The position numbers were made by a program, and so were the translations under genes. DNA of 64,000 bases, taken from the NCBI GenBank assembly GCA_002269645.1, contig NIVC01000412.1, forward strand, positions 124,001 to 188,000, given 5' to 3'. How positions within the stretch are numbered: the stretch's first letter is position 1; each line of letters opens with the position of its first letter. Positions 18,683 through 20,002 of the stretch are shown one piece after another. The notes below the pieces were generated by a model that saw nothing but the letters and a program-made list of their open reading frames with translations, did not search any database and was not told the origin of the DNA. The DNA comes from Macrostomum lignano (taxonomy: Eukaryota).

Positions 18683-20002
18683 ATGCAGGTCAATCCGCAC
18701 ATGCCTGGCATGATGCCAATGGCCCCAGTTAGCAGTATGCAGCAGAGCATGCCAATGGTGCAGCAGCAGCCTATGACGCATCCGGGCCAGATGCCAATGA
18801 TGGCTTATGGCCAGCAGCCGCCGCAGCAGCAGCAGCAGCCGTTTATGGCCTACCCGCAGCCGGGGCCGCCCATGCCTGGCGTGATGCCGCCGCCTCCGCC
18901 GCCCCAGATGCAAATGCAAGGCCCAGGCCCTATGGATATGCAGTTCATGATGCAGCAACAGCAGCAGCCTCCGCAAATGCTGCATCATCAGCATGGACCC
19001 CAGAATCATCGCCAGCATCACGGAGGCGGCGGCGGCGGCGGCGGAGGTGGAAGCGGCCAGAATCCCAAGGGTCGCGTGTTCATTGGCAATCTGAACACGA
19101 ACGAGCTGGGCCGAGCCGATCTGGAGCGAATATTCAGCAAATACGGCAGCCTGACGGAAGTCAACGTCCATAACGGCTTCGCTTTCGTGCAGTTTGTCGA
19201 AGAGCCGGCAGCTCGGTCCGCTTGCAAACGCGAGGACGGCCGCGTCTACGCCGGCCAGACCATCGACGTGAACATCGCGTCTGAGCCCAAGAATCGGCGA
19301 GACCGACACGGCGGCGGCAGCGGCTCGTCGGCGTCGAGCGTTGTCAGCGGCGGCGGCGGTGGCGGTAGCAGCGGCCTCAGTGTGAAGGAGCGTCTGGGAC
19401 CCCGACGGCTCGGCAGTCAGGACGACAGCGGCGGTTTCGACTCCGGCAAGCTGTCTCAAGTTGGCGCCTCGCGCGATAGAATCAGCGGCGGCCGGGACTA
19501 CTTGGTCTGCGGCAACTGCAAGGACGTTTTCGACAACCTGGACCGGCTCAGTTCGCACAAGCAGGACGGCTGCCGACGCCGGTTTGTCTGCCTGTGCAAG
19601 CTGAAGGGTGAACCCAGGATGCTGGACTGCGCCAAGTGCGGCAAGCAGTTTCTCAGCAGCTGGGAGCTGCTGCGCCACTGCCAGGCTGAGCATGAGATTG
19701 GCGTGTACACCAACTGCGTCTTCGCTGCCGGCATTGGCGGCGGCGAGACCGCGGCCTCCGCCGCCGCTGCCTCATCTGTCGGCGGCAGTGCCAACACCAG
19801 CGGCGAAATCGCGGCGGCCACGGTTGAAGGCAGCGGCGGCGACGGCCCTGTTGGTGCTGCCGCCGGCGCTGAACTGTCCTCAGCCGCGGCCTCGGAGACT
19901 GAGCCTGAGCCCGCTGGCGGCAGTCGGCGCCGCGGCGAGATGGAAGACGATGAAGCCACTGACGAAGATGAGGACGATGATGATAGCGATAAGAATGACT
20001 GA
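18683..20002 (+). CDS. Intronless protein, 439 aa: Q/P/M-rich N-terminus, hnRNP-C/RALY-type RRM, BCL11-type CCHC and C2H2 zinc fingers, acidic tail
   Basis: [45 protein letters not shown] (hnRNP C RRM); [46 protein letters not shown]. Confidence 0.88.
   Translation: [439 protein letters not shown]

What the first reader, a model, noticed from the sequence alone, without database searches (positions are those of the whole stretch)
18683..20002. hnRNP-C-type RRM fused to a BCL11-type CCHC plus C2H2 module in an intronless gene
Seen: a close hnRNP C/RALY RRM followed by SVKERLG, then CGNC-x-H-x4-C and CAKC..F.S.W.LL.H.Q..H..Y. These resemble the BCL11A/B N-terminal ZnF0 (LLTCGQC..EHKRKQC) and ZnF1 (FTSAWFLLQHAQNTH..IY). 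Established: hnRNP C tetramerises through a leucine zipper, which is not evident here, and BCL11 ZnF0 mediates self-oligomerisation. Inference: a chimeric, possibly retroposed, RNA-binding protein in which the zinc module replaces the zipper, with a prion-like Q/P/M N-terminus. I do not recognise this architecture from other animals.
Basis: partly seen in the sequence, partly recalled or inferred. Interest (0 to 1): 0.75.

Follow-up and report, generated by a model that had tools for sequence, protein, structure and literature searches.

The report
Flatworm hnRNP C-like RRM–zinc-finger gene
This Macrostomum lignano gene is a real but ordinary, divergent member of an hnRNP C-like protein family found across bilaterian animals, carrying a two-zinc-finger module related to the BCL11 N-terminus where vertebrate hnRNP C has its leucine zipper; it is not a flatworm-specific chimera.

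Summary
The 439-aa ORF at 18683-20002 (+) exists as described. The window is Macrostomum lignano (Mlig_3_7), and the gene is annotated there as a single-exon gene. Its RRM is 56% identical to the human hnRNP C RRM.

The CCHC + C2H2 module (aa 272-342) is a conserved unit. In a library-wide search, 51 of the 150 listed cluster representatives combine the same RRM with the same module. They come from flatworms, molluscs, an annelid, a brachiopod, a bryozoan, a priapulid, a nematode, insects, ticks, a hemichordate and amphioxus. The architecture is therefore bilaterian-wide, and some sources already label members "hnRNP C".

The BCL11 resemblance holds at profile level: hhalign gives 98.5% probability, E 3e-15 against a BCL11-family N-terminus, versus about 1e-6 for generic zinc-finger arrays. 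The ZF0-specific features are absent, however: the 14-residue spacing, the hydrophobic helix face and a Pfam PF25491 match above threshold.

No zipper exists in this protein. Retroposition is unsupported: the sister paralogue is also intronless, and there is no poly(A) tract or target-site duplication.

Most likely function: a nuclear U-tract RNA-binding protein whose zinc module mediates protein-protein contacts or self-association. That step is inferred, not shown.

The parts
18683..20002 (+). Complete single-exon CDS, 439 aa plus stop, of an hnRNP C-like RRM-zinc-finger protein
   Evidence: ORF list. The same product is called as a gene at two loci of the M. lignano assembly. In-frame TAA at 18677-18679.
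18683..19027 (+). N-terminal low-complexity region, aa 1-115 (Q 24%, P 23%, M 19%), predicted disordered. It is followed by a Gly10 run (aa 114-123, nt 19022-19051).
   Evidence: Composition. pLDDT about 50. Shorter P/M/G-rich N-termini occur in the scallop member (P0132) and in several unnamed members that cluster with it.
19067..19303 (+). hnRNP C/RALY-type RRM, aa 129-207. RNP2 is RVFIGNL (19073-19093); RNP1 is NGFAFVQF (19172-19195).
   Evidence: Pfam RRM_1. PDB hnRNP C E 2.4e-24. 56% identity to the human C protein. AF2 pLDDT 95-98.
19382..19393 (+). This is a degenerate counterpart of the family-wide PPxK[KR]xR motif, which equals human hnRNP C P-S-K-R-Q-R at residues 142-147 and is probably a nuclear localisation signal.
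   Evidence: Full-length alignment columns. Human sequence. The NLS function is inferred from established knowledge of hnRNP C.
19496..19573 (+). Finger 1, aa 272-297: D-Y-L-V-C276-G-N-C279-x12-H292-x4-C297 (CCHC), related to BCL11 ZF0
   Evidence: Invariant columns. Spacing is 12/4 in 44 of 46 members. pLDDT 89-95 with a beta-beta-alpha fold. hhalign against a BCL11-family protein.
19589..19597 (+). Conserved Cys-x-Cys (C303, C305) in the inter-finger linker; role unknown
   Evidence: Present in 40 of 46 members. At least 90% conserved in the full-length alignment.
19628..19708 (+). Finger 2, aa 316-342: C316-x2-C319-x12-H332-x4-H337 plus IGVY. It is a C2H2 finger with invariant W327 at helix position +2, related to BCL11 ZF1.
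   Evidence: Pfam zf-C2H2_4 hit, below threshold. Invariant columns. Position-wise conservation. hhalign. pLDDT 95-96.
19718..19999 (+). C-terminal disordered A/G/S-rich region (aa 346-418) ending in an acidic tail (aa 419-439, nt 19937-19999; the last 30 residues are 50% D+E)
   Evidence: Composition. pLDDT below 50. Acidic tails are common in the family and in human hnRNP C.
20015..20155 (+). Putative 3'UTR with five copies of a roughly 21-nt motif, GTGACTGAAyGGyCATAnGAG. AATAAA signals lie at 20424, 20534 and 20563.
   Evidence: Repeat family D5. AATAAA positions. That this is UTR, and any function, is inferred.
18373..18526 (.). 154-nt near-perfect palindrome 160-310 nt upstream of the ATG, centred on GTCACGTGAC (18443-18452), with a CCAAT box in each arm. 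It is a candidate promoter element.
   Evidence: Inverted repeats I1 and I4. Unique in the window. Identical in the second genomic copy. Promoter function is inferred.

Best explanation
The ORF is a functional, lineage-specific paralogue of a bilaterian-wide hnRNP C-like family in Macrostomum lignano. The family layout is: hnRNP C-type RRM, then a PPxK[KR]xR basic motif, then a two-finger zinc module (CCHC, C-x-C, C2H2), then an acidic tail.

Shown:
- The domain identities.
- Conservation of every zinc ligand.
- The wide phyletic distribution, with a gene tree that roughly follows taxonomy.
- Profile-level homology of the module to the ZF0-ZF1 N-terminus of BCL11-family proteins.
- Absence of any zipper or long helix.
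- Equivalent position of the module and the vertebrate zipper between the basic motif and the acidic tail.

Inferred mechanism:
- The RRM binds uridine tracts in nascent nuclear RNA, as hnRNP C does.
- The zinc module is a protein-protein interface, most likely for self-association, and not a DNA reader. It would give the protein the multivalency that vertebrate hnRNP C gets from its coiled coil.
- The disordered Q/P/M-rich N-terminus and the acidic tail modulate interactions.

This paralogue is the more derived of the two M. lignano copies. It has a long N-terminal extension, has lost the N-x-T-N..DP lead-in, and has a degenerate basic motif.
For: - RRM.
- Family and architecture: the module search gave 353 hits. 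Of the 150 listed representatives, 51 carry both the RRM and the full module.
- Named members: M. lignano paralogues, Mesocestoides, Lingula ('hnRNP C'), scallops ('hnRNP C1/C2'), Owenia; Musca, Eurosta, Aedes, Zootermopsis, Priapulus, Pristionchus; Glandiceps, Branchiostoma, Watersipora, Phlebotomus, ticks.
- Invariant ligands. Fixed spacings.
- Neighbour-joining tree with the two M. lignano paralogues as sisters inside a flatworm clade.
- BCL11 link: hhalign 98.5%, E 3e-15 over 79 columns. Controls gave 6e-6 and 8e-7. P0220 is BCL11-family. It is the only one of 42 multi-finger hits with both signatures. 23 of 46 members touch PF25491.
- BCL11A ZF0 and ZF1 mediate self-association: PMC12006351.
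- Helix positions that read DNA in canonical fingers are S, invariant W, D/E and Q/V in finger 2, and mostly polar or acidic in finger 1.
- No zipper.
- Shared PSKRQR-type motif and N-terminal lead-in with human hnRNP C.
Against: - No experiment or oligomer model was run, so self-association is extrapolated from BCL11A.
- Finger 1 lacks the two ZF0 features linked to the tetramer core: 12-residue spacing instead of 14, and no run of five hydrophobic residues.
- The flatworm sequence alone does not hit PF25491 or the ZF0 peptide structures.
- The AF2 model shows two independent fingers with no fixed mutual geometry (pTM 0.46).
- No transcript evidence for this locus was available. The exact protein was found only in the genome annotation.
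- The degenerate basic motif and the long branch could mean relaxed constraint.
Confidence: 0.7

Rival explanations
1. The zinc module is a second nucleic-acid-binding domain (RNA, or DNA making the protein a transcription factor) and not a protein-protein or oligomerisation module.
For: - Both fingers are predicted as classical beta-beta-alpha folds.
- The nearest structural and sequence neighbours are DNA-binding C2H2 arrays.
- Basic residues flank finger 1: K/R at the first position after the second Cys in 44 of 46 members, HK..C, and the K/R-L-R-F linker.
- NCBI names the two fly members sampled (Musca, Eurosta) as a transcription factor.
Against: - There are only two fingers, separated by a variable 13-34-residue linker instead of the canonical TGEKP linker.
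- The base-contacting helix positions carry an invariant Trp, acidic residues and hydrophobic residues. PMC12006351 and the bioRxiv paper 10.1101/2024.12.10.627839 associate this pattern with non-DNA-binding fingers.
- The closest specific relatives, BCL11 ZF0 and ZF1, are self-association fingers.
Confidence: 0.22
2. One reading: a flatworm-specific chimera, possibly a retrogene, that fused an hnRNP C RRM to a BCL11-derived zinc module.
For: - The CDS has no intron.
- The word-index search with the RRM plus module returned only vertebrate hnRNP C hits covering the RRM.
- The word-index search with the module alone found nothing.
Against: - The exhaustive search shows the same architecture in at least ten phyla, including deuterostomes.
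- The gene tree tracks taxonomy.
- The sister paralogue is also intronless.
- There is no A-run of 7 or more within 1.5 kb downstream, and no flanking direct repeats beyond AT-rich chance matches.
Confidence: 0.03
3. The 439-aa copy is a decaying or neofunctionalising duplicate with little remaining hnRNP C-like function, and the roughly 300-aa paralogue is the working orthologue.
For: - It has the longest branch in the flatworm clade.
- It has lost the conserved N-terminal N-x-T-N..DP lead-in, and the KRxR motif is degenerate as VKER, while the paralogue keeps IKRAR.
- It has large low-complexity expansions.
Against: - The ORF is intact and the protein is identical at two genomic loci.
- All 11 invariant family columns, the C-x-C and both RNP motifs are retained.
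- Both domains are predicted with very high confidence.
Confidence: 0.08

Closest known systems
Vertebrate hnRNP C / RALY / RALYL
   Same: - A single RRM of the same subtype, 56% identical, with conserved RNP1 and RNP2.
- At family level, the N-x-T-N..DP..SRVF(I/V)GNLNT lead-in and the P-x-K-R-x-R basic motif.
- An acidic C-terminal tail.
- The same order of elements.
   Different: There is no basic-zipper or leucine-zipper tetramerisation region. A CCHC + C2H2 zinc module occupies that position. This paralogue also has a 125-residue Q/P/M-rich N-terminal extension.
Invertebrate 'hnRNP C-like' RRM-zinc-finger proteins (e.g. Lingula XP_013382175 'hnRNP C isoform X3', Mizuhopecten 'hnRNP C1/C2', Branchiostoma XP_078579733, M. 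lignano PAA50351)
   Same: Same architecture, same invariant residues and spacings, and the same C-x-C. The M. lignano 300-aa paralogue is its sister.
   Different: It has the longest N-terminal extension of the 51 members analysed. It also has a degenerate basic motif, lacks the N-terminal lead-in, and has R instead of L at the C-[KR]-L-R-F position.
BCL11A/BCL11B (and the BCL11-family fish protein P0220) N-terminal ZF0 + ZF1
   Same: - First finger: D-x-L-x-C-G-x-C ... H-[KR]-x3-4-C, with CCHC ligands.
- Second finger: E-P..x-C-x2-C-x3-F-x-S-x-W-x-L-L-x-H-x-Q-x2-H-x3-I-Y.
- hhalign 98.5%, E 3e-15 over both fingers. P0220 is the only one of 42 multi-finger hits that shares both signatures.
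   Different: - BCL11A ZF0 has 14 residues between the second Cys and the His, and a five-residue hydrophobic stretch that forms the tetramer core. Here the spacing is 12 and the helix face is mostly polar.
- The fingers are 18 residues apart here. In BCL11A they are separated by a long spacer; about 100 residues is my recollection, not tested. In P0220 the two signatures start 50 residues apart.
- There are no DNA-binding ZF2-6 arrays.
- The Pfam PF25491 hit is below threshold for the family and absent for this protein.
Drosophila CG42458
   Same: It is treated in the literature as the fly hnRNP C orthologue (PMC5570092). Dipteran proteins with the RRM plus module exist in Musca, Eurosta, Aedes and Phlebotomus.
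   Different: I could not retrieve the CG42458 sequence, so whether it carries the zinc module was not tested here.

Membership tests
hnRNP C / RALY family (vertebrate definition) | Single N-terminal RRM of the C subtype with RNP2 (R/K)VFIGNL and RNP1 KGFAFVQ(Y/F) | tested here: met
   PDB hnRNP C E 2.4e-24 and RALY 8e-22, with the next RRM at 2e-12. 56% identity over 80 aa. Motif positions.
hnRNP C / RALY family (vertebrate definition) | Leucine-zipper (CLZ) oligomerisation helix after the basic region | tested here: not met
   BLASTP aligns only the RRM. A heptad scan finds the human zipper at residues 180-207 but nothing in this protein or in 5 invertebrate members. The AF2 full-length model has no helix outside the RRM and the fingers.
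hnRNP C / RALY family (vertebrate definition) | Basic P-x-K-R-x-R motif (NLS region) between the RRM and the oligomerisation element | tested here: inconclusive
   Conserved in most family members and in human C (PSKRQR, residues 142-147). In this paralogue it is degenerate: S-V-K-E-R.
hnRNP C / RALY family (vertebrate definition) | Acidic C-terminal tail | tested here: met
   The last 30 residues are 50% D+E. There is only weak compositional alignment to the human tail.
hnRNP C / RALY family (vertebrate definition) | Binding of uridine tracts in nuclear pre-mRNA | not testable with these tools
   Needs RNA-binding assays.
Bilaterian hnRNP C-like RRM + two-finger family (unnamed) | Order RRM -> linker -> CCHC finger -> C-x-C -> C2H2 finger -> tail | tested here: met
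   51 of 150 representatives share it.
Bilaterian hnRNP C-like RRM + two-finger family (unnamed) | Invariant D, C-G-x-C, H, C / C, C, W, H, H columns, with spacings C-x2-C-x12-H-x4-C and C-x2-C-x12-H-x4-H | tested here: met
   All 11 invariant columns are present. Spacings are 12/4 in both fingers.
BCL11-type N-terminal module (ZF0 + ZF1) | CCHC zinc ligands in the first finger | tested here: met
   C276, C279, H292, C297.
BCL11-type N-terminal module (ZF0 + ZF1) | 14 residues between the second Cys and the His in ZF0 (PMC12006351) | tested here: not met
   12 residues here and in all 46 family members. hhalign needs a 2-residue gap.
BCL11-type N-terminal module (ZF0 + ZF1) | Stretch of five hydrophobic residues at the start of the ZF0 helix (tetramer core) | tested here: not met
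   The finger 1 helix reads N-L-D-R-L-S-S. Family-wide, only positions 7, 10 and 11 of the 12 residues between the second Cys and the His are hydrophobic.
BCL11-type N-terminal module (ZF0 + ZF1) | ZF1 signature F-x-S-x-W-x-L-L-x-H-x-Q-x2-H-x3-I-Y | tested here: met
   [20 protein letters not shown]. W is invariant and L is at least 90% conserved. The regex signature is shared only with BCL11-family P0220 among the multi-finger hits.
BCL11-type N-terminal module (ZF0 + ZF1) | Match to Pfam PF25491 (BCL-11A-like CCHC zinc finger) at the curated threshold | tested here: not met
   There is no hit for this protein at E<=10 (full protein) or E<=1 (module alone). 23 of 46 family members hit only below threshold, with a best E of 0.0017.
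BCL11-type N-terminal module (ZF0 + ZF1) | Profile-level homology to a BCL11-family N-terminus across both fingers | tested here: met
   hhalign 98.5%, E 3.2e-15, 79 columns. Generic controls gave 6e-6 and 8e-7. The family profile matches the ZF0 peptides 9bv0 and 9b4p at E about 0.017.
BCL11-type N-terminal module (ZF0 + ZF1) | Zinc-dependent self-association (tetramer or dimer) | not testable with these tools
   Only monomer prediction was available.
BCL11 transcription-factor family (whole protein) | DNA-binding C2H2 arrays ZF2-3 and ZF4-6 | tested here: not met
   This protein has only the two N-terminal-type fingers.
Processed retrogene | Intronless copy of an intron-containing parent gene, with a poly(A) remnant and target-site duplications | tested here: not met
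   The CDS is intronless, but so is the only paralogue examined (909-nt single exon). There is no A-run longer than 6 within 1.5 kb downstream. There are no flanking direct repeats beyond AT-rich chance matches.
Prion-like (Q/N-rich) domain | Q/N-rich, proline-poor low-complexity region scoring in a prion-domain predictor | tested here: inconclusive
   Composition is Q 24%, P 23%, M 19% and the region is predicted disordered. The high proline content is atypical. No dedicated predictor was available.

The most novel reading that the evidence does not exclude
The CCHC + C2H2 module is the ancestral bilaterian self-association domain of hnRNP C-type proteins and is homologous to the ZF0-ZF1 oligomerisation module of BCL11 transcription factors. 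On this reading, vertebrates replaced it with a coiled coil. The multimeric 'RNA ruler' behaviour of hnRNP C would then be ancient but built from two unrelated oligomerisation devices. The conserved inter-finger C-x-C might add an intermolecular zinc site.
Probability: 0.3. Interest if true: 0.6.

Novelty: new member of a known kind. Interest (0 to 1): 0.4.

Why it matters
For this locus, the result removes a false lead. The gene is not a unique chimera or a retrogene. It is a divergent paralogue of a widespread family.

At family level the analysis shows three things that I did not find described in the searchable literature:
- Invertebrate hnRNP C-like proteins, including those of amphioxus and a hemichordate, carry a conserved two-finger zinc module exactly where vertebrate hnRNP C has its tetramerising zipper.
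- That module is specifically related to the BCL11 ZF0-ZF1 self-association module, which has medical interest because of fetal-haemoglobin silencing.
- Several members are mis-named, for example 'transcription factor mef2A' in the two flies sampled (Musca, Eurosta).

If the module does oligomerise, it would offer a tractable invertebrate system for studying how hnRNP C-type multimers measure RNA. M. lignano, with soaking RNAi and transgenesis, and Drosophila are the obvious candidates. It would also provide a natural example of one oligomerisation domain being swapped for another.

Tried and rejected
1. Word-index homologue search with RRM+module. It returned only vertebrate hnRNP C covering the RRM, because candidate selection was swamped. 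It wrongly suggested that no orthologues exist.
2. Word-index search with the module alone. It found no candidates. This was a limit of the method and was overturned by the exhaustive search.
3. PDB sequence search with the flatworm module and with finger 1 alone. Both gave only generic C2H2 hits and no significant ZF0 match, because the sequence is too short and too diverged.
4. Foldseek of the module model against the PDB. Nothing reached E<=1e-3 and only generic C2H2 arrays appeared. The fold is too small to discriminate.
5. Bacterial-type promoter/terminator scan of the 3' flank. It is irrelevant for a eukaryote.
6. Literature searches for an invertebrate hnRNP C zinc finger, for flatworm hnRNP C, and for CG42458 domain architecture. 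None described the architecture.
7. The possible splice acceptor TTGCAG about 70 nt upstream of the ATG. It is not conserved in the second genomic copy, so I make no claim about a 5'UTR intron or trans-splice site.
8. The antisense ORFs overlapping the CDS (354, 183 and 125 aa). I did not search these for homologues. I dismiss them as by-products of the GC-rich repetitive codons, because the + strand frame accounts for the conservation.
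Full report
**Observation**

The window is from the free-living flatworm Macrostomum lignano. The exact 439-aa product is encoded at two loci of assembly GCA_002269645.1 (NIVC01000412.1 and NIVC01003561.1), and papers cite that accession as the M. lignano genome. The two loci are almost identical through 1.2 kb of upstream flank, so they are allelic or homeologous copies of one gene.

A TAA lies two codons upstream of the ATG (18677-18679), and every quoted motif is present at defined positions.

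**The RRM**

Pfam finds one significant domain, RRM_1 at aa 132-194. Against solved structures the best matches are human hnRNP C (E 2.4e-24) and RALY (8e-22). The next RRM family, yeast Nab3, is ten orders of magnitude weaker. BLASTP against the human C protein gives 56% identity over residues 131-210 and nothing else apart from a weak compositional match of the acidic tails. The hnRNP C-type assignment of the RRM is secure.

**The zinc module is a conserved unit**

Pfam gives only sub-threshold generic C2H2 hits on the second finger. A word-index search with the module found nothing. The exhaustive phmmer search of 1.84 billion cluster representatives found 353 proteins at E<=1e-3 and 38 at E<=1e-10.

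The hits fall into two classes. One class is long poly-finger proteins that match finger 2 many times over. The other class matches residues 10-82 of the query in one stretch, that is, both fingers as a unit.

An alignment of 46 such modules (A1) has these invariant columns: D272, C276, G277, C279, H292, C297, C316, C319, W327, H332 and H337. The spacings are fixed at C-x2-C-x12-H-x4-C and C-x2-C-x12-H-x4-H, joined by a variable linker of 13-34 residues. A Cys-x-Cys in the linker is present in 40 of 46 members.

AlphaFold2 predicts two independent beta-beta-alpha fingers with pLDDT above 90 and a flexible linker.

**The architecture is not unique**

Of the 150 listed representatives, each below 50% identity to the others, 51 contain both an hnRNP C-type RRM and the complete module in the same order. 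Source names and taxa:
- Flatworms: a second M. lignano paralogue group of about 300 aa, and the cestode Mesocestoides.
- Other Spiralia: the brachiopod Lingula (named 'heterogeneous nuclear ribonucleoprotein C'), four scallop species ('hnRNP C1/C2', 'hnRNP C-like 3'), the annelid Owenia and the bryozoan Watersipora.
- Ecdysozoa: Priapulus, the nematode Pristionchus (two tandem modules), flies (mis-named 'transcription factor mef2A'), Aedes, Phlebotomus, a termite and ticks.
- Deuterostomes: the hemichordate Glandiceps and amphioxus.

A neighbour-joining tree on 223 conserved columns roughly follows taxonomy. It places the two M. lignano paralogues as sisters within a flatworm clade (no bootstrap was run).

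The architecture is therefore ancestral to Bilateria, or at least very old, and vertically inherited. This gene arose by a duplication in the macrostomid lineage.

**Relation to vertebrate hnRNP C beyond the RRM**

The full-length family alignment (A3) has the consensus VGNxTNSxDP....SRVFVGNLNT before the RRM and PPxK[KR]xR after it. Human hnRNP C has [22 protein letters not shown] and PSKRQR (residues 142-147) at the corresponding places, and it also ends in an acidic tail.

The human zipper heptads (residues 180-207) are picked up by a simple heptad scan. The same scan finds none in the flatworm protein, its paralogue, Lingula, scallop, Glandiceps or amphioxus.

The full-length AF2 model of the flatworm protein has no helix outside the RRM and the two fingers. 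Everything else is predicted disordered.

So the zinc module and the vertebrate zipper occupy the same slot, between the basic motif and the acidic tail. The module is present in protostomes and in invertebrate deuterostomes, so the simplest reading is that the zinc module is the older state and the vertebrate zipper is derived. An ancient paralogy with reciprocal loss is not excluded.

**Relation to BCL11**

One hit of the exhaustive search, P0220 from the fish Periophthalmus (470 aa), is a genuine BCL11-family protein. Its residues 311-402 match BCL11A ZF4-6 at E 3e-39, and its first finger matches the BCL11A ZF0 peptide structures 9b4p and 9bv0 at E 7e-6 and 2e-5.

Evidence that the link is specific:
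- The flatworm module alone matches P0220 across both fingers at a library-wide E of 1.2e-7.
- The family profile aligns to P0220 residues 54-138 with hhalign probability 98.5% and E 3.2e-15 over 79 columns.
- Two generic poly-finger proteins used as controls give only E 6e-6 (gapped) and 8e-7 (31 columns).
- Two regular-expression signatures, D-x-[LIM]-x-C-G-x-C...H-[KR]...C and C..C...F...W.L..H....H...[IVL][YFC], occur together in 97 of the 150 hits. Among the 42 multi-finger proteins they occur together only in P0220.
- The Pfam model PF25491 'BCL-11A-like CCHC zinc finger' is touched by 23 of 46 family members, always below threshold (best E 0.0017), and not by the flatworm protein.
- The family profile reaches the ZF0 peptides at E about 0.017.

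But PMC12006351 lists three peculiarities of ZF0: CCHC ligands, 14-residue spacing, and a five-residue hydrophobic stretch that forms the tetramer core. Only the first is met here. The spacing is 12, and the finger 1 helix is N-L-D-R-L-S-S. Finger 2 keeps the ZF1-like S-x-W-x-L-L face.

**Function**

Shown: the domain composition, its conservation, and the absence of a coiled coil.

Inferred:
- The RRM binds U-rich nuclear RNA as in hnRNP C. This rests on established knowledge of the family, and RNP1 and RNP2 are conserved.
- The module is a protein-interaction device, most plausibly for self-association. There are three grounds. Its only specific relatives are the BCL11 self-association fingers. 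The positions that read DNA in canonical fingers are S, invariant W, D/E and Q/V. And it sits where hnRNP C has its oligomerisation helix.

The missing ZF0 hydrophobic core means that a BCL11A-like tetramer cannot simply be assumed. The interface may instead be the ZF1-like finger, the conserved C-x-C, or a heterologous partner. A nucleic-acid-binding role is the main rival.

'Intronless' is correct for the CDS. But the 302-aa paralogue is also a single 909-nt exon. No A-run longer than 6 lies within 1.5 kb downstream, and no flanking direct repeats exist beyond AT-rich chance matches. Retroposition is unsupported.

The N-terminus (aa 1-115; Q 24%, P 23%, M 19%) is a disordered low-complexity extension. 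The scallop member (P0132) and several unnamed members that cluster with it have shorter P/M/G/R-rich N-termini. Its proline content makes a prion-like amyloid domain doubtful, but no dedicated predictor was available.

'SVKERLG' is the degenerate remnant of the family's K[KR]xR motif.

**Verdict**

The feature is real and correctly observed, but it is not a novelty of this flatworm. It is a divergent paralogue of a bilaterian-wide, poorly characterised hnRNP C-like RRM-zinc-finger family. The family-level link to the BCL11 ZF0-ZF1 module, and the zinc module standing in the zipper's position, are worth a short note and an oligomerisation test. I found no paper describing them.

Noticed in passing
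window 18373-18526: A 154-nt near-perfect palindrome lies 160-310 nt upstream of the ATG. The outer arms are 46 nt and 91% complementary; the inner arms are 23 nt. It is centred on GTCACGTGAC (18443-18452), an E-box/CLEAR-like decamer, with a CCAAT/ATTGG box in each arm. It is unique in the window and identical in the second genomic copy, and it is a possible promoter element.
   Followed up: partly
window 20015-20155: Five copies of a roughly 21-nt motif, GTGACTGAAyGGyCATAnGAG, start 13 nt after the stop codon in the presumed 3'UTR. They could be a repeated regulatory or protein-binding site.
   Followed up: no
window 19589-19597 (C303-x-C305) and alignments A1 and A3: A Cys-x-Cys between the two fingers is conserved in 40 of 46 family members, although both fingers already have full ligand sets. 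It might form an extra, possibly intermolecular, metal site. The BCL11-family protein P0220 lacks it.
   Followed up: partly
window 10089-10547 (-): An exon of ribosomal protein uL22/RPL17 (Pfam Ribosomal_L22, E 1e-17). The ORF ends before the protein's C-terminus, so this neighbouring gene has at least one intron.
   Followed up: partly
window ~21500-41000 (+): A large multi-exon plexin gene downstream, annotated with a 2181-aa product and the Plexin_cytopl and Plexin_RBD domains. Its introns are full of long micro- and minisatellite tracts, for example 24889-25779, 31343-32753, 37211-37996 and 38971-39602.
   Followed up: no
window 57400-61900 (-): Exons of a P4-type phospholipid-translocating ATPase (flippase): PhoLip_ATPase_C at E 3e-13 and Cation_ATPase at E 2.6e-11.
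   Followed up: no
window 48828-50135 (+): A 435-aa ORF rich in Q, S and A with no Pfam hit. It may be another low-complexity nuclear protein or may be non-coding.
   Followed up: no
proteins P0173, P0178, P0192, P0201, P0233, P0244, P0262, P0263, P0269: A related family without an RRM, found mostly in marine metatranscriptomes. It has a conserved KKFRPP..YIPKPIP.ELGNLKTYSNPDILICGNC lead-in and a much longer spacer between the two fingers, which is closer to the BCL11 layout.
   Followed up: no
proteins P0217 and P0219 (Musca, Eurosta): Dipteran members of the RRM-zinc-finger family are named 'transcription factor mef2A' by the automatic annotation. This looks like a misnomer, presumably driven by low-complexity regions.
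   Followed up: no
protein P0240 (Pristionchus mayeri): The nematode member carries two tandem copies of the two-finger module after the RRM remnant.
   Followed up: no
L001 versus L002, alignment column ~1130 (window ~18610): The only cluster of differences in the proximal upstream region between the two genomic copies changes TTGATTGCAGATCC to TTGATGCATGATCC. This removes the candidate splice acceptor.
   Followed up: partly
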